Assembly: GCA_002104945.1 (NCBI GenBank)
Contig: MCFH01000027.1
Location: 1-64,000 of the forward strand
DNA length: 64,000 nt
DNA from: Piromyces finnis finn
Lineage: Eukaryota; Fungi; Neocallimastigomycota
Reading direction: 5' to 3'
The notes beneath the pieces were generated by a model. The model did no database searches. It saw nothing but the letters and a program-made list of their open reading frames with translations, and was not told the origin of the DNA. Shown here piece after piece: positions 27,126 to 62,383 of this stretch (positions within the stretch are counted from its first letter, which is position 1; each line of letters starts with the position of its first letter). The translations under genes and the position numbers were made by a program.

Positions 27126-29467
27126 TTCATTGTTAAGGAATGAACATAAATAGTTGAATTAGCTAGAATTTTAGGATTTAACCTTCAACTATTTATATTC
27201 CTTACTAGTGTTTAACTCTATTTTTAAAATATAAAAATTATAATATATAATTTTTATACATTTTTCTAGTAATTATTAATATTTTTATTATATAGTTATA
27301 TTATTTGTATATAGTTATTTAAGACCTTTATTATTAGTATTAGTATAATTACTTATAATATTTTATACTTATAAAATTTTACAAAATTTTATTATTAAAA
27401 TAGTTATAGGTATTTTATTATTATTTAAGGTTTATTTTATTAATTAACTTTATTGTATAATATTTTATAATTTGAAATTATGACATAGAATTTAATTATA
27501 ATTTTTACTAAAAGAGGCAACTGTTACACACAAAACAGAAGATACCTCGACAGAAAAATTATTATTTATGTCTAAAAAAGGGCATAATTAATTGAATAAT
27601 ATAATTTTATTATATGTCATAATTAAATATATAATATATGATATGCAAAAATGTTACACATATCATAAATTAAAAATATATTAATTATAAATTATAAATT
27701 AAAAATTTTTCTATTCAAATATTAAGAGATTATTCATAATATATATTAAGGATTTAATTAATATATATTACAGTGAATGATCCATATATTATGAATGAAA
27801 TCAATTTAAATACTTAGCTATCCAAAACCATTAAATTTCAAATAATGGATAGTTGGAAAAAGTACGAGGATTTTTGAGAAAAAATTTTAAAAATTGAAAA
27901 ATCAAAAAATAAATTAAATGAATAAAAATTAGAATTAAATAAATTTTTATTTTTATAACTATTCAAGTGTTTTGTGATATCTTATTTGAACCGTAGCATC
28001 ATTGATACGTGACGAACAGAAAATACTACTTTTGGTAGAAATTCCAGGTTAATTCATATAAGGGTTAAGATAATAATAAATTAATAATAACTTTAATTAA
28101 TAATGAAATTAATTAATATGAAATTAATTAAAAAAAAATATTTAATATGTACTAATATAAATATAATTAATAATTAAATAATTAAAATGATGTTCTTGAT
28201 TTTGTAATTTAGTTCCAAAGATAATAAGATATAATAAAATGAGAAATTTAGTAGTAGTTTAGTAATATTAATAGTGAATAAGTAGTATATTTATATAGGA
28301 AATATAGTTATTTTAAATATGTATTATTAATAATAAATAAATGTAAAAATACTAATTATAATATATTTTAATAAAGATAAATATTTAATAATAATAAAAG
28401 GCTTATTTTGTTTATAATAATAACAATAATAATAATAATAACAATAAATAATAATAAATAAGTAAATAAATACATAATAACTATATCACATAATTATTAA
28501 TAACTGGAATATATTATTTCAGCAATATTCCTTATTACCACAACCTCAAAATAAATAATAATATTATGATATTTTATTTTATAACGTATCATCATCAAAA
28601 AGCGATTTTTTATTAAAGAAAAGTGTGGTAAGCACACTAGTTATATTAATTAACAAATAATACACTTTCCTATTGAAGGCGTAAAGCTAATAATATTTAT
28701 ATAAAGAAAATTAAATAATATTTTTATTTTAGCAATAACTTAATATCAGCATATATTAAGTTATTAAAAATATTAAAATTTTTAAAGTTTTGGGTTTTAT
28801 AGGAGTTTATAAATTCTATTAACTTTAAGTTAAAAAATTACTAACTCTAAAGCTTCGTAATTTTTGTCAATTTTTGTTCTTTTTATACATGAACAATTTT
28901 AATTATTACATTTTTAATTTTAATTAATTATTGTCTAATTATATAATATTTAATTTTTATAAATTAATAATTAATATAATTATTGTAAATAGTTAATAAA
29001 TTTAAAATAAAATTTTTAATAATAAAATTTTAATAATTTTAAAAAAATTTAATAATTTCAAATATTAGAAATTTTATACTTTGAAATTTTTTAATAAAAA
29101 TTTAAAAAATAAATTTTTTCCATATGTCCAAATTTTTTAAATTTTTATATATGTTATTGTGACAAATTTTGTTGTGTAAGAATATATACTTATTATTTAT
29201 TCTTAGTATTAAACATTATAAATAATTTATTTAGTTAATAATCATTAATCCATTAAATTATATTAATATATTATTATAGTTATTTGTTAAGTTAAATATT
29301 ATAAATATTTATTTAGTTAATAATTATTCATTCACTATATTAGATTAATTAATTTATTTAATTATATATTTATACATTCATTTATATACACTTGTATTAT
29401 AAAAGGTAAAACATATACTAATTACATTAATAATATTATATAACTATATATTAGTATGTAATAGGAA

Positions 29468-29605
29468 ATCGGATATTAAGGTTTTACCCGTTATCAATGG
29501 TTTTACTTAATATTACGATAATTGGTATGATTAGAATATCAATCAAATAACTTTTTAGGTTTTTCTTTTAGTCTTTTACTAAAAAGATTTTTGTTAAGAT
29601 TAGAA
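29468..29605 (+). ncRNA. Cis-acting structured RNA candidate: ENE-like stem, hairpin, H-type pseudoknot
   Basis: ATATTAAG/CTTAATAT lower stem, TTTT/TTTT internal loop, CCGTT/AATGG upper stem, then pseudoknot CTTTTTAG/CTAAAAAG with TTTTAGTCTT/AAGATTAGAA. Covaries with five other copies. Confidence 0.6.
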
Positions 29606-29903
29606 TGTTCTTAGAAATTTTAATTTAATAAAATAAAACATATAAATAGTACTCTTGAGTTCGATTTGAGAAATCAAGAGTTATTATTATAAGATTAATT
29701 ATAATAAATAACTTTATACAAAATAATAAGTAATAAAATAAATATTAAAAAACTATTAAATACACAAAATAATTCTGATACATTTGGTGTTTGTTTATTA
29801 TAATTTCTTATAATAAACTCATTAAGTTAAGTTTCTAATTTTATCTTTATTTTCACATTTTAATAATAATTTATATTATTAATTTGAAGCTAATAATTAT
29901 TAT

Positions 29904-30519
29904 TGTAAAGATATCAAACGCCTCAACTTGATATCTTTAATGTAACTTAAGCCATAAGTATTATTGTTTAAGTTACACAAATTATATTCAGAAAAAGAAA
30001 ATGAGACATAATTTATTTATTAATAATTAAAGTTTAAAACAAAATAAATTATTAATTTATTTTTAATGTTTAACAAGTAAATTAAAATTCTCAATTTAAA
30101 TCCCTAGTTTTAGTATTGTTTTTTTCATAGAAATAGATAAATAATATATAAATAATAAATGATTAATATATCAATAATACATGGGCACATATTCAAATTG
30201 AATAGTACTTAATTTGAATTGCCGATTGTATTTTACTAAAAATAGTTATAGTTTAAATATTTATTAATAATTAAGATTTTAGTGTAGATTTTAAATAATG
30301 ATATATAAGAAATAAATAGTTATAATATAATATAAATGTATTTAGGAAAAATATAAATAGAAGATATTTTTCATCATTTTATCGATGTAATTGTTATTAA
30401 TAAAATTTCTATTATAATAAAAGAGATTTTTAATAAAACAATTTTTATTTTTATTTTAAATTTAGTGTTATTGTAATAGAATAGATATCCTAATCTATTC
30501 TTCTAGTGTCAACATTACA
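29904..30519 (+). mobile_element. Family A solo LTR (616 bp)
   Basis: TGTAAAG...ATTACA, TSD ATTAT on both sides, same family as the 3' LTR at 41342-41959. Confidence 0.92.
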
Positions 30520-31153
30520 ATTATTATATAATAAATATAATATAATTATTACATGTTGTTAAGGAACCAACAAATAATGTTATTCTTGTCATAATTAATG
30601 ATTATAACCTAATCCATTATTGTTCCTAAATGTATGAAAACTTTACAATATTCTTATTTGTAAATTAATGTATACACTTAAATTATATTTAAAATTATTA
30701 ATAATTATTTTTATTGAACTTAAATTTTATTTTATTAAACTTAAAAATTAATTTAGTAATAATAATATATTGAAAATTATAGTTTATTGAACTTTTAGTT
30801 TAATTTATCAAGTTAATGAATTTTTATTAATTAAAATTATGAATAATATTTCTGTAATGTAGTAAAATTCTTTAGTTAAATATATTTGAAGTAAACTTTT
30901 AATAATGTATGTTAATCGATTCAATAATATGTATAAATATTTATTATAATAGTAATGTAATTTTATTATTAATTTAAAAGTAATTTAAATACTAAAATTA
31001 ATGTAAATAATTAAAGAATAATTCTTTTAATTAACACTACTTAATTTTTTACAAAAAGTATAAAAAGGTGTATATTATAAGAATTAGAGAAGAGACAGAT
31101 ATTTTTTTATTTTCATTTTTTTTATTTTATTTTTATAATTTTATATTTATACC

Positions 31154-44229: not shown

Positions 44230-45015
44230 TGTAATAATTCCATTATAAATTATTATATAATAGAATTATTAACTACAATTTATTGATAAATTGAGAATAA
44301 AAAGAAAATAAATATTAATACTTATCTTTAAGTTCGAGTTTATTATAAGAGTAGAAATAATTTTACACTTTAATAAGTTAATATGTTTTATTATAACTAA
44401 GTTAAGTAAAATAAAATTAAAAAACACTTTTATTATTATAATTTGTTTCTTATAATAATAACTCTTGATTCCTTAGAAGAGAATCAAGAGTCTTTATTTA
44501 TATTATTTAATAAATTTAAAGTTTAAATTAAAATTTTATCTAATCTTAACAAAATAATTTTTTGTTTAGGAAAAGATTAGAAGAAAAACCTAAACAAAGT
44601 TCGATCAATATTCTATACATATTGATCATCGTATATTTTAAGTAAAACCAATTATTTTAGAAATTGGAAAAACCTTAAAATATCGATTCCTAAACAATGA
44701 ATAATTATTTTAAAGTAATTAATTAAATAAATAATTAAATATATTTGATAAAAATATAAAGTTAAATAAAAGTAATTAATTAAATTAATTAATTAAATGA
44801 ATAAATATAATTAATAAAAATATTAAATAAAATATTAATGAATAATATAATTAAATGGCTAAATGTAATTTAAGATATTAAAATTAAGTGAAAATAAATA
44901 ATTAAAACAAATTTAAATGAGAATAATTATTTAAATAAACTAATATTAATAACATTAATTAATGATTTTAACTAAGAAATATTAATTATGTATCAAATAA
45001 TTATTATTTCTTACA
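44230..45015 (-). mobile_element. Family B solo LTR (786 bp)
   Basis: TGTAAT...CTTACA, TSD CACAA/AACAA (4 of 5), second copy at 58336-59814. Carries the ENE/pseudoknot module at 44539-44687. Confidence 0.85.
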
Positions 45016-55782: not shown

Positions 55783-57552
55783 TGTAATAATTATATTATA
55801 TTTATTATATAATAATAATTATTAGCTTTAATGTGAAGATATTAACTGGATTTAAAACAAATTCAGATAATATCTATAATTAATTAAACATAATAATTAG
55901 AATTAAATAATCCCAATAATTATTTTAAAACACCTTTAAAAGTCACCTTTTAAATTTTGGTTCAGTGAAAGGGTTATGATTTCAAAAAATTTAATATCAA
56001 TACACTATAACCCTTAACCAAAAATAAACAAACACGAAACAAGGTGTAACTCGCCAAAAACGATCGCTACGGCTGTAAGTGATACGGCTATGAAACCAGG
56101 TTTATTAGAAAGCTTAAGGAAAAAGCTACATTTTGGTACAATCGCGGTCCTTCTAACAGGTCATTTAAGGAAGATATGATCATTCGAAGATTTTAATAAG
56201 TAAATTAAAATTAATATGATATCAAGTATGGATCATAGACATTTCTTATGATTTGACGAAAATTAAAAAGATATCAATAGAAATTCTAATTATATTAATT
56301 TAATTAATGATAGTGACTGTTACTAAAAATAGAACTAAACCATTTAGGTGTAACGGTTAACATTTATAAATTAAATAATTTTAATTATTATAAAATAGGT
56401 TAATGGATCAAGTGTTTAAATGATTAATCATATGTTTATTTTATTTTATGTCATGACAAAACAAACAAACAAACAAACAAACAATCTTATTATATTATTA
56501 ACATATTACATGTAATACTTTATTTTTATCAATTTAATAATCTGAACAAAGAATATAAAATAGAATGAATTGAATTCGATTTTAATTCTTTGTAAAGATT
56601 ATAGTTATAATCTTAATTATATAGTTATTAAATATATTATCATTTATATTATTATTAATAAATAAATAAAATTTTATAAAAAAGTTATTCTAAAGAATAA
56701 ATATTAATTTCTCATTTGGAAGTTTAAAGGGTTATTTTATATTTAAATTTAATTTCTTAAAAAACATATTTACTATATAATTGATAACATTCTGACCTGG
56801 CCGCATAACCAAATCCAAAAACTTAACATTTAAATTAATAATATAAACTATTATTAAAATGTGAAAATAAAGGTAAAATTAGAAACTTAACTTAATGAGT
56901 TTATTATAAGAAATTATAATAAACAAAACCAAATGTATCAGAATTATTTTGTGTATTTAATAGTTTTTTTAATATTTATTTTATTACTTATTATTTTGTA
57001 TAAAGTTATTTATTATAATTAATCTTATAATAATAACTCTTGATTTCTCAAATCGAACTCAAGAGTACTATTTATATGTTTTATTCTATTAAATTAAAAT
57101 TTCTAAGAACATTCTAATCTTAACAAGAATCTTTTTAGGAAAAGACTAGAAGAAAAACCTAAAAAGTTATTTGATTGATATTCTAATCATACCAATCATC
57201 GTAATATTAAGTAAAACCGTTGATAACGGGTAAAACCTTAATATCCGATTTCCTATTACATACTAATATATAGTTGTATAATATTATTAATGTAATTAGT
57301 ATGTGTTTTATCTTTTATAATACAAGTATATATATAAATGAATGTATAAATACATAATTAAATAAATTAATTAATCTAATATAGTGAATGAATAATTATT
57401 AACTAAATAAATATTTACAATATTTAACTTAACAAATAACTATAATAATAAATAAATATATTAATATAATCTAATGGATTAATGATTATTAACTAAATAA
57501 ATTATTTGTAATGTTTAATACTAATAATAAATAATAAGTATTTATTCTTACA
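55783..57552 (-). mobile_element. Family E solo LTR with nested family G insertion
   Basis: Reverse complement of 29175-30553, TSD TACTG/TATTG (4 of 5). Module at 57112-57249. Confidence 0.85.
55832..56828. mobile_element. Family G solo LTR-like insertion (997 bp)
   Basis: TGTGAAG...CTTAACA with TSD TTTAA. Its removal restores the E sequence seen at 29870-29900. Confidence 0.85.
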
Positions 57553-58335
57553 TATTGATACAAGATGCATAGAAAAATATAATATTTTAAATATTTTATG
57601 AATAATATCTAATCCTTTTATAAATTGTATATCAATACTAGTGTTAATAATAATTAAACTATATTAGTATAAATTATTATGACGCAAATGTTACACATAT
57701 ATTAGAATAATTAATTACACAAGAAATGAAAAGATATAAAAATAGTGATAAAGAACAAGATATAAAAAAAAAGAGAGAACTTTTCATTTATAAATAATAT
57801 TTGATATTTTAGTTTTAAGTATAAGTTCTATTTTATTTTATTTTAGTTACAGTTTATTTTAGTTTAGTTTTAGGTTACTAATTACGTATTTAGTATTTAT
57901 TATATTTAATTCAGTTTAAAATATTAATTATAAAAGAAAAGAATAATTATTGTTTATTTTTATTATTTCAAAAAGTTATATTTTATTATTAATAAGAATT
58001 TTATCAACATATTTTTATATTTACATTTTATATTTAACTATTTATATTTATTAAATAATAACTTTCGATTCTACTAGTATTGAATGTTATTAATCTTATA
58101 ATCATAATAATAATAATAATAATTAAATAAAGAAACTTTAAACCAAAATCTATTTAATTATATTATTATAAAATCTATTATTTTTATTATTTATTTTTAT
58201 TATTTATTTTTATTATTATAAAATAGAAATAAATACAATATTATCTAATATATTATTCAACTATCATTCCCTATTGCTAACGTTCACAATTATATTTTAT
58301 TTATGGTGTTTTTGAAATATATTGCATCATTGTTG

Positions 58336-59814
58336 TGTAATAATTCCACTATAAATTATTATATAATAGAATTATTAACTACAATTTATTGATAAATTGA
58401 GAATAATAAAAAAAAAATAAATATTAATACTTATCTTTAAGTTCGAGTTTATTATAAGAGTAGAAATAATTTTACACTTTAATAAGTTAATATGTTTTAT
58501 TATAACTAAGTTAAGTAAAATAAAATTAAAAAACACTTTTATTATTATAATTTGTTTCTTATAATAATAACTCTTGATTCCTTAGAAGAGAATCAAGAGT
58601 CTTATTTATATTATTTAATAAATTTAAAGTTTAAATTAAAATTTTATCTAATCTTAACAAAATAATTTTTTGTTTAGGAAAAGATTAGAAGAAAAACCTA
58701 AACAAAGTTCGATCAATATTCTATACATATTGATCATCGTATATTTTAAGTAAAACCAATTATTTTAGAAATTGGAAAAACCTTAAAATATCGATTCCTA
58801 AACAATGAATAATTATTTTAAAGTAATTAATTAAATAAATAATTAAATATATTTGATAAAAATATAAAGTTAAATAAAAGTAATTAATTAAATTAATTAA
58901 TTAAATGAATAAATATAATTAATAAAAATATAAAGTTAAATAAAAGTAATTAATTAAATTAATTAATTAAATGCATAAATATAATTAATAAAAATATTAA
59001 ATAAAATATTAATGAATAATATAATTAAATGGCTAAATGTAATTTAAGATATTAAAATTAAGTGAAAATAAATAATTAAAATAAATTTAAATGAGAATAA
59101 TTATTTAAATAAACTAATATTAATAACATTAATTAATAATTAATAATTAATGTGTAAAGACATCAAACGCCTCTGTTTGATATCTTTAATGTAACTTAAG
59201 CCACAAGTATTATTGTTTAAGTTACACAAATTATATTCAGAAAAAGAAAATGAGACATAATTTATTTATTAATAATTAAAGTTTAAAACAAAATAAATTA
59301 TTAATTTATTTTTAATGTTTAACAAGTAAATTAATATTCTCAATTTAAATCCCTAGTTTTAGTATTGTTTTTTTATAGAAATAGATAAATAATAAATGAT
59401 TAATATATCAATAATACATGGGCACATATTCAAATTAAATGGTACTTAATTTGAATTGCCAATTGTATTTTACTAAAAATAGTTATAGTTTAAATATTTA
59501 TTAATAATTAAGATTTTAGTGTAGATTTTAAATAATAATATATAAGAAATAAATAGCTATAATATAATATAAATGTATTTAGGAAAAATATAAATAGAAG
59601 ATATTTTTCATCATTTTATCGATGTAATTGTTATTATTAAAATTCTATTATAATAAAAGATATTTTATAAAACAATTTTTTATTCTATTTTTCAAATTTT
59701 TGTGTTATTGTAATAGGTTAGATATCCTAATCTATTCGGTTTAGTGTCTGACTTTACATAATGATTTTAACTAAGAAATATTAATTATGTATCAAATAAT
59801 TATTATTTCTTACA
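58336..59814 (-). mobile_element. Family B solo LTR with nested family A LTR
   Basis: TSD TGTTG, near-identical to 44230-45015, internal 66-bp duplication near 58860-58990. Module at 58647-58795. Confidence 0.9.
59153..59758 (+). mobile_element. Family A solo LTR (606 bp)
   Basis: TGTAAAG...TTTACA, TSD TAATG. Empty site visible in the other B copy near 44960. Confidence 0.92.
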
Positions 59815-61259: not shown

Positions 61260-61842
61260 TGTAAGAATTTAATATATAATTTTAATTATATATGTACATT
61301 CTTAACTACAATGTAATAATACACTGTAAGTAATATAATAATATAACTATATACACAAAATAATTAAAGCGTATCTTTAATGTTTGTTTTATTCTTATTT
61401 TAATTTATTTAATAATTTTTCTTTTGATATAATTTTTAAAAAATTTTTATTAAAAATTCTCTTAATAAGTTTTGAGTTTATTTTTTCTTACAAAGAAAAA
61501 ATAATAACTCTTGAATTTTTTAATTAAATTCAAGAGTTGTTTTATTTATAGGAATTTTAAAATTTTAGGTTAAATTAAAGAATTTTCTAGTCTAACAAAT
61601 AAATCTTCTAGGGAAAGACTAGATAAGAAAACCCTAGAATAATTTCGATTAATAATATATTCTTATTAATCACCGAATAATTAAATCAAAACCTATTTGT
61701 GATAGGAAAAATATTTAATATCCGGTTCCTATTAATTTTACTTTAATTTTAATTTAGATAATAATATAAACTAAATAATTAAATAAAATGTTTAATATAA
61801 TTAAACTAAAACTACAATTTAATTTACATTACAAATATTACA
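61260..61842 (-). mobile_element. Family F LTR-like repeat (diverged relative of B/E)
   Basis: Same hairpin, pseudoknot and ENE layout (61586-61726) at the same distance from a TGTAAG end. Right boundary uncertain. Confidence 0.55.
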
Positions 61843-61954: not shown

Positions 61955-62383
61955 TGTAAGAAATATAGAAATAAATTCTATATTTCTTAAGTATTATTAA
62001 GTATAAATTTATATTAAATTTATTATTTATTATAATTCTATTTTATAATTAAATTAAACAAACCTTAAAGAATATAGAAATTTACTCAATTCATTCAATA
62101 ATGTTCAATTAAAAAAATATAATAAATAGAAATATCCAGTAAAAGAAATATTTAGATTAATTTTTAATATATATAAATTAAGTCATTAATATTAAAAATA
62201 AATTAAATAATATTTTTCCAAAATCAATTTGGTTTTTTAATTATTTAATTCAACAAGTAATTCTTCAGGTTTTTCTTCTAGTCTTTTCCTGAAGAAACAA
62301 CAACCAGACTAGAATCCAATAAAAAGCCATAAATAACAAATTATTAATCAATTTAATAAATTAAAATTTCATGATTTAATATA

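What the first reader, a model, noticed from the sequence alone, without database searches (positions are those of the whole stretch)
29468..29519. ENE-like domain: every stem covaries while both U tracts are invariant
Upper stems in the predicted sense strand are CCGUU/AA(U/C)GG (E), CCAAUU/AAUUGG (B), CCUAU/AUAGG (F) and CCAAA/UUUGG (62218), all with CC/GG next to the U tracts. Lower stems are AUAUUAAG/CUUAAUAU (E), AUAUUUUAAG/CUUAAAAUAU (B), AUUAAAU/AUUUAAU (F) and AAUUAAAUAA/UUAUUUAAUU. The basal helix is AUCG/CGAU in B and E but ACCG/CGGU in F. A purine-purine mismatch (G-A, or A-G in F) borders the loop. G-U pairs occur on one strand only, which fixes the RNA strand and hence the orientation of these otherwise unoriented solo LTRs.
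Basis: partly seen in the sequence, partly recalled or inferred. Interest (0 to 1): 0.8.

Follow-up and report, generated by a model that had tools for sequence, protein, structure and literature searches.

The report
ENE-like RNA hairpin in retrotransposon LTRs
A small RNA hairpin with two facing runs of U is conserved, with many compensating base changes, in the long terminal repeats of gypsy-type jumping genes of a gut fungus, and it looks like a known kind of element that grips the RNA's poly(A) tail, though that action is untested here.

Summary
At 29468-29519 (+) the sequence folds into a basal helix, a lower stem, an internal loop with two facing U4 tracts, and a CC/GG-closed upper hairpin. 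Five more copies lie in the window.

The host repeat is the LTR of intact Ty3/gypsy retrotransposons. In six of six full-length elements from six families the U-tract reading is on the gag-pol sense strand. The genome holds roughly 300 copies. Related elements in five other metagenome or Logan samples carry the same architecture with different stems.

On 19 distinct sequences, 97.7% of cells pair and 11 of 17 pairs change on both sides (0 of 500 shuffles reach this). The U4 cores and the CC/GG pairs do not vary.

The motif sits 127-142 nt upstream of a conserved TATAAA. It is therefore most likely in U3, which is present only in the 3' UTR of the element's RNA.

ENEs embedded in plant and fungal LTRs are already described (Tycowski 2016). 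I class this as a new member of a known kind, in an anaerobic gut fungus.

Copy E1 is a 5' LTR of a disrupted element, not a solo LTR.

The scan had already noted this module elsewhere in this window (s1-185384).

The parts
29468..29519 (+). ENE-like hairpin, copy E1: basal helix 29468-71/29516-19, lower stem 29473-80/29506-13, G.A mismatch 29481/29505, upper hairpin 29488-29500
29482..29485 (+). 5' U tract (U4, followed by A C)
   Evidence: U4 core invariant in all distinct variants
29501..29504 (+). 3' U tract (U4, followed by A)
57198..57249 (-). ENE-like hairpin, copy E2 (family-majority form, upper stem CCGUU/AACGG)
58736..58795 (-). ENE-like hairpin, family B copy
   Evidence: z = -5.0
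44628..44687 (-). ENE-like hairpin, second family B copy (identical)
61672..61726 (-). ENE-like hairpin, family F copy (basal ACCG/CGGU, mismatch A.G)
62201..62250 (+). ENE-like hairpin, family G copy (all A-U lower stem, U5/U6)
29175..29888 (+). LTR of a family E Ty3/gypsy element; a 5' LTR of a disrupted element, 95% identical to intact copies
29521..29543 (+). Second hairpin of the module (covaries between families)
29551..29605 (+). U-rich hairpin whose loop pairs with 29596-29605 (pseudoknot; subject of another finding)
29641..29648 (+). Conserved TATAAATA, 127-142 nt after the motif core and 32-36 nt before TCAAGAG
29652..29680 (+). Third hairpin (CTCTTGA...TCAAGAG); stem sequence conserved rather than covarying
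29812..29820 (+). Conserved AATAAACTC block, candidate poly(A) signal

Best explanation
The motif is a conserved RNA structure on the sense strand of the LTR of an active clade of Ty3/gypsy retrotransposons in an AT-rich anaerobic gut fungus. The assembly statistics match Piromyces finnis. The motif lies in the part of the LTR upstream of the conserved TATA box, so it is most likely in U3. On that reading it is present once in the genomic RNA, in the 3' UTR between the pol stop and the poly(A) tail. Shown here: the hairpin exists, its three helices are kept by compensatory changes, and the two U4 cores and the flanking CC/GG pairs are constrained. Inferred: the two U tracts clamp a run of A from the poly(A) tail as four to five U.A-U triples stacked under the G-C pairs. 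That would slow deadenylation and raise the level of the element's RNA, as shown for the KSHV PAN ENE and the Arabidopsis Evade ENE.
For: - **Architecture and folds:**
- **Covariation against shuffled and slid controls:**
- **Variety of stems:** 15 upper and 12 lower stem variants, with invariant U4 cores and CC/GG.
- **Sense strand:** six of six full-length elements carry the motif on the gag-pol strand. ORFs are intact and LTR pairs are 99.1-100% identical.
- **Copy number:** about 300 copies.
- **Other samples:** the same architecture, with new stems, sits at the same place after the pol stop and polypurine tract in contigs from other samples.
- **Fixed place in the LTR:** the motif core ends 127-142 nt before a conserved TATAAA, and a conserved AAUAAACUC lies further downstream.
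- **Short upstream part in one relative:** in L117 the motif starts only about 75 nt after the LTR start, which leaves little room for U3 plus R upstream of it.
- **Decayed copies:** single copies do carry U-tract and CC/GG mutations, so these sites are not mutational cold spots.
- **Precedent:** ENEs embedded in LTRs of plant and fungal TEs are described (PMC13541005, PMC7583470). The Evade ENE lies hundreds of nt from the tail and still works (PMC12501189).
Against: - No triplex test was possible.
- No Rfam family matches at E <= 10.
- The U tracts give only four or five triples.
- The lower stem is A-U rich and separated from the loop by a purine-purine mismatch. Families F and G lack the G-C pair there, whereas G-C pairs next to the U tracts were essential in Evade (PMC12501189).
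- If AAUAAACUC is the poly(A) signal, the motif lies about 220-320 nt from the tail.
- All families descend from one ancestor, so invariance is partly inherited.
Confidence: 0.55

Rival explanations
1. The hairpin is a real, selected RNA structure, but its U-rich internal loop is a binding site for a protein (the element's Gag/nucleocapsid, or a host U-binding factor) or serves packaging, dimerisation or reverse transcription. It does not hold the poly(A) tail.
For: The structure and loop constraint do not say what binds the loop. The motif is the first part of a longer conserved module with a second covarying hairpin and a pseudoknot, as in viral 3' UTRs that recruit proteins. The lower-stem G-C requirement of ENEs is only loosely met.
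Against: Two facing, nearly equal U tracts closed by G-C pairs are the specific signature of ENEs. LTR-embedded ENEs are known in fungi. No protein partner is indicated by anything found here.
Confidence: 0.25
2. The U tracts take part in a larger tertiary fold of the whole module (hairpin, second hairpin, pseudoknot) and pair with A-rich segments of the same RNA rather than with the tail. An example would be a nuclease-resistant or tRNA-like 3' structure.
For: The downstream element has the same 'AGG-U5-C ... C-U4-(A/C)C' layout and is weakly hit by the hairpin model. The spacing between module parts is conserved. The 246-nt region folds better than all 200 shuffles.
Against: The only nearby A run (3' strand of the pseudoknot stem) covaries with its own partner and is not conserved as A's in families B, F and L111. 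L111 lacks the middle hairpin yet keeps the ENE-like hairpin.
Confidence: 0.12
3. The conservation acts on DNA. The two GGTTTT(W)C boxes are direct repeats that bind a transcription factor in the U3 promoter, and the stems are incidental palindromes.
For: The motif lies 127-142 bp upstream of a conserved TATA box. The two U-tract boxes are direct repeats.
Against: A DNA site does not explain 11-12 helix positions changing on both sides while staying complementary. It also does not explain G-U pairs that would be A-C mismatches on the other strand.
Confidence: 0.05

Closest known systems
ENEs of plant and fungal transposable elements (Tycowski, Shu and Steitz 2016, Cell Rep 15:1266; as summarised in PMC7583470 and PMC13541005)
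   Same: Stem-loop with a U-rich internal loop next to G-C pairs. Sense strand of a TE transcript. Some are embedded in LTRs. No more than about five predicted triples (the last point is from my recollection of the abstract).
   Different: I could not read the paper or its sequences, so homology is untested. Here the U4 core is short. A purine-purine mismatch sits between the loop and the lower stem. The element is single-domain, whereas most plant TE ENEs are double-domain. A hairpin and a pseudoknot follow it. The host is an anaerobic gut fungus.
Evade (Copia93) ENE of Arabidopsis (PMC12501189)
   Same: An LTR retrotransposon 3' UTR element, hundreds of nucleotides upstream of the tail. Its U tracts and adjacent G-C pairs were needed for oligo(A)-dependent melting, RNA stability and mobility.
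   Different: Evade's element lies in a spacer before the 3' LTR, has four U tracts (two domains), and belongs to a copia element. Here the element is inside the LTR of gypsy elements and has one domain.
KSHV PAN RNA ENE (Mitton-Fry 2010, via PMC7583470)
   Same: Single-domain hairpin. U tracts face each other and are closed above by C-G pairs. An unpaired A follows the 3' tract (the A is from memory).
   Different: PAN has U5/U5 giving five triples, plus three A-minor contacts with G-C pairs of the lower stem. Here the tracts are U4-U7 and U4-U6, and the lower stem is mostly A-U.

Membership tests
ENE (poly(A)-binding triple-helix element) | Stem-loop with an internal loop made of two facing U tracts | tested here: met
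   The 5' tract is U4-U7 and the 3' tract U4-U6 in all 31 parsed variants. The same MFE architecture appears in 9 of 9 variants folded.
ENE (poly(A)-binding triple-helix element) | G-C pairs directly flanking the U-rich loop (stacking and A-minor receptors) | tested here: inconclusive
   Above the loop, two C-G pairs are invariant in multi-copy lineages. Below the loop, the first pair is G-C in 19 of 31 variants and A-U or U-A in 12. It is preceded by a purine-purine mismatch in most lineages.
ENE (poly(A)-binding triple-helix element) | Lies in the 3' part of a polyadenylated transcript, upstream of the tail | tested here: inconclusive
   The motif is on the sense strand in six of six elements and lies after the pol stop in the 3' LTR. 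It is upstream of a conserved TATAAA and AAUAAACUC.
ENE (poly(A)-binding triple-helix element) | Forms U.A-U triples with oligo(A) or the poly(A) tail | not testable with these tools
   Needs melting, gel shift or a solved structure.
ENE (poly(A)-binding triple-helix element) | Raises RNA stability or protects the tail from deadenylation | not testable with these tools
   Needs a reporter or mutant assay.
ENE (poly(A)-binding triple-helix element) | Match to a curated covariance model | tested here: not met
   No Rfam 15 family matches at E <= 10 on the window copy or on three related loci. I do not know whether TE ENE models are in that library.
Double-domain ENE (dENE) of plant and fungal TEs | Two U-rich internal loops in one stem, separated by a short duplex | tested here: not met
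   There is one internal loop per hairpin. The next U-rich element is a separate hairpin or pseudoknot about 30-45 nt downstream.
Ty3/gypsy LTR retrotransposon (host element) | Paired LTRs around a gag-pol with protease, RT, RNase H and integrase in that order | tested here: met
   Match to the Ty3 Gag-Pol structure 7q5b at E = 1.8e-146. LTR pairs are 99.1-100% identical. Pfam domain order on related contigs agrees.

The most novel reading that the evidence does not exclude
The hairpin is the first part of a composite 3'-UTR device peculiar to Ty3-like elements of anaerobic fungi. On this reading it is an ENE-type clamp that works with only four U.A-U triples and uses a purine-purine platform in place of G-C A-minor receptors. 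It would be coupled to a second hairpin and a U-rich pseudoknot of the same ancestry, and together they would capture or measure the poly(A) tail. That would be a new structural subclass of tail-binding element, evolved in a genome where nearly every transcript is A/U-rich.
Probability: 0.15. Interest if true: 0.7.

Novelty: new member of a known kind. Interest (0 to 1): 0.45.

Why it matters
If it works as an ENE, it extends poly(A)-clamping triple helices to the Neocallimastigomycota and to Ty3-like, tRNA-targeting elements that still look active. It would also supply a natural series of about 20 stem variants around a minimal U4 core, useful for asking how few triples and which flanking pairs such a clamp needs. 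It marks the sense strand of some 300 LTR copies. It may help explain how these elements keep their RNA stable in a genome that is 13-20% G+C between genes.

Tried and rejected
- I did not send it again, and no query holding it or its copies went to a DNA-pattern, genome, paper or findings search. Loci and the window that contain homologous LTR stretches were scanned locally with my covariance models and read in local scripts.
- **Exact look-up of two gag-pol proteins.** Neither sequence is in the collection.
- **Contigs of no use.** L113 and L114 stop 240 nt after the stop codon, before the motif. L116 and L118-L124 are truncated or unrelated and showed no motif.
- **More distant element.** A chromodomain gypsy element with 48% integrase identity (L251) shows no motif in the 716 nt after its stop. 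This is one negative only.
- **Thermodynamics alone.** This is weak for E1 (z = -0.84 for 71 nt, -1.96 for 56 nt).
- **MAFFT alignments.** A1 and A4 put the upper stem out of register. Counts were therefore made on model-based alignments, which lean towards the model's structure.
- **Alternative TATA.** The TATAAAAG at LTR position 233 of family E, upstream of the motif, is not conserved in other families.
- **Rejected readings.** Chance hairpin, and a DNA-only palindrome.

Full report
**Observation.**
Window 29468-29519 (+) reads as follows:
- a basal helix AUCG/CGAU
- a bulged G
- a lower stem AUAUUAAG/CUUAAUAU
- an internal loop with G-UUUU-AC on the 5' side and UUUU-A on the 3' side
- an upper hairpin CCGUU-AUC-AAUGG

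This is the minimum-free-energy fold of the isolated stretch. It survives when 246 nt of context are folded (z = -3.1).

A pattern and parser search finds five more copies in the window:
- E2 at 57198-57249 (-)
- B at 58736-58795 (-) and 44628-44687 (-)
- F at 61672-61726 (-)
- G at 62201-62250 (+)

Six full motifs in the 41-kb AT-rich part of the window compare with 0.025 expected from dinucleotide shuffles. Among 80 unrelated metagenome contigs that match the bare core (AGGUUUUUCC ... GGUUUUAC), only one also has both stems.

**What carries it.**
A 106-nt query around the motif hits dozens of places in the genome, several in pairs about 5 kb apart.

One such pair (L031) is a 5.7-kb element:
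- 727-bp LTRs that are 99.9% identical
- a 1344-aa open reading frame that matches the Ty3 Gag-Pol structure at E = 1.8e-146

Full-length elements of five further families have the same layout. In all six the U-tract reading lies on the gag-pol strand, in both LTRs.

The G-U pair in E1 is a private C-to-U change in a decayed copy, because the family majority has G-C.

E1 is not a solo LTR. Its LTR (29175-29888) is followed by 16 nt of leader, then a nested insertion, then more leader at 30520-30553.

The genome has 56,455,805 bases in 232 contigs. The three largest contigs match the published Piromyces finnis assembly.

Copy number is about 300:
- 137 matches to the 3' half of the E/H-type motif, against 0 for the reversed control
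- more than 100 B candidates
- 19 F copies, 12 G copies and 11 K copies

**Is the structure selected?**
My parser found 31 distinct variants, with 15 upper stems and 12 lower stems.

Count on 26 distinct sequences aligned with a covariance model:
- 97.2% of cells form standard pairs, against 86.7% in shuffles
- 12 of 17 pairs change on both sides
- the covariation score is 0.289 against 0.119
- no shuffle out of 500 reaches any of these values
- sliding the partner by 1-3 columns drops pairing to 27-41%

A lineage-focused set of 19 distinct sequences gives 97.7% and 11 of 17.

These alignments are fitted to the model and the sequences are related, so the numbers overstate independence. The many different stems still cannot be explained without a structure.

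In the same alignments the four U of each tract, the second C and the two G next to them never vary. Stem columns and the terminal loop vary freely.

Single decayed copies do carry changes in the U tracts and in CC/GG:
- L086 has UUAU in the 3' tract
- L094 has GA in place of GG
- L074 and L076 have CU in place of CC

These sites therefore mutate like others after insertion. Their constancy among multi-copy lineages reflects selection in the active lines.

It is not the right test.

**Other samples.**
A word search with the last 300 residues of the integrase found relatives at 68-81% identity in JGI, ENA and Logan assemblies. I pulled the contigs that encode them. The same architecture sits just after the pol stop, the polypurine tract and the TG start of the LTR.

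New stems seen in these contigs:

| Locus | Lower stem | Upper stem |
|---|---|---|
| L111 | AUUUAUUAAAG/CUUUAAUAAAU | CCA/UGG |
| L115 (first motif) | AUGUUAAUUGAA/UUCAAUUAACAU | CCGAU/AUCGG |
| L115 (second motif), L117 | UCAAUUAGG/CCUAAUUGA | not listed |
| L248 | not listed | CCAAAUAU/AUAUUUGG |
| L250 | not listed | CCAGUA/UAUUGG, with a G-U pair |
| L252 | not listed | CCAGA/UCUGG |

Model R2 was built only from sequences of this genome. It finds these motifs at E of 1e-10 to 1e-12.

A more distant chromodomain element shows none. That is one case with limited sequence.

**Place in the LTR.**
The distance from the LTR start to the motif core varies from 176 to 424 nt. The distance from the core to the LTR end is 387-424 nt.

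Downstream of the motif lie, in order:
- a second hairpin that covaries
- a U-rich hairpin whose loop pairs with a downstream segment (a pseudoknot, the subject of another finding)
- a TATAAA box
- a third hairpin
- a conserved AAUAAACUC

The TATAAA box follows the motif core by 127-142 nt in six families. It precedes TCAAGAG by 32-36 nt wherever that word is present.

In L117 the motif begins only about 75 nt after the LTR start.

The simplest reading is that transcription starts about 30 nt after the TATA box. On that reading the motif is in U3 and appears only in the 3' UTR of the genomic RNA, about 220-320 nt before a tail added after AAUAAACUC.

If instead UAUAAA is the poly(A) signal, the motif would lie about 150-170 nt from the tail. 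Either way it is upstream of the tail. These boundaries are inferred.

**Mechanism and rivals.**
The best reading is an ENE. The two U tracts would bind a run of A from the tail as four to five U.A-U triples under the invariant C-G pairs, hindering deadenylation.

This matches the defining anatomy in the reviews (PMC7583470, PMC13541005). It also matches the experimentally tested Evade element, which likewise lies far from the tail (PMC12501189).

Weak points:
- the tract is short
- a purine-purine mismatch and a mostly A-U lower stem stand where G-C pairs are expected
- no Rfam family matches
- there is no binding or expression data

Rivals are a protein-binding or replication role for the loop, a role inside a larger fold with the downstream hairpin and pseudoknot, and a DNA-level promoter site. 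The last does not account for the covariation.

**Novelty.**
[quoted passage not shown] I could not read that paper or compare sequences. I found nothing on such elements in Neocallimastigomycota in the library.

I file this as a new member of a known kind, well supported as a structure and plausible but untested as a poly(A) clamp.

The scan had already noted the same module at 62201-62314 of this window, and a follow-up agent reached a similar view. My tests were made independently and agree.

Noticed in passing
L099:6734-6824, L125:6701-6789, L126:507-595: Three of six full-length elements end 14-17 bp from the 5' end of a tRNA gene: tRNA-Arg(TCT) 16 nt after the B element, tRNA-Gly(GCC) 17 nt after H5, and tRNA-Thr(TGT) 14 nt before H1. 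This is Ty3-like targeting of Pol III genes. The window also has tRNA genes at 24896, 26227, 46125 and 46935 among LTRs.
   Followed up: partly
window 29551-29605 (and the same place in B, F, L111, L115, L117): A hairpin whose 20-nt U-rich loop pairs with a segment about 10 nt downstream (UUCUAAUCUU with AAGAUUAGAA; CCAAAUCUU with AAGAUUUGG in L115). Both helices covary. Its flanks (AGG-U5-C ... C-U4-A/C-C) mirror those of the ENE-like hairpin, which suggests an old duplication.
   Followed up: partly
window 29521-29543: A short hairpin between the two U-rich elements covaries strongly between families (GAUUGAU/AUCAAUC, GAUCAAU/GUUGAUC, GAUCGAUAU/AUAUCGAUC). It is absent in L111.
   Followed up: partly
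window 1-23000: Nearly three rDNA units of 8534 bp (18S, 5.8S, 28S). Each has a 5S rRNA gene on the opposite strand in the spacer. They abut the AT-rich transposon field at about 23 kb.
   Followed up: no
window 28901-30179 vs 56493-57809: The E1 and E2 LTRs share about 78% identity that extends into both flanks. In both, the leader fragment lies 0.6-1 kb beyond the LTR. The two loci look like copies of one disrupted insertion (a segmental duplication).
   Followed up: no
L084:374-503, L094:230-288: The pseudoknot hairpin is tandemly duplicated (71-nt period) in some H-type LTR copies.
   Followed up: no
L113, L114, L249 (contig ends): Metagenome contigs of related elements repeatedly break at or just before the conserved module. 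This is as expected if the module is shared by several LTR families in those samples.
   Followed up: no
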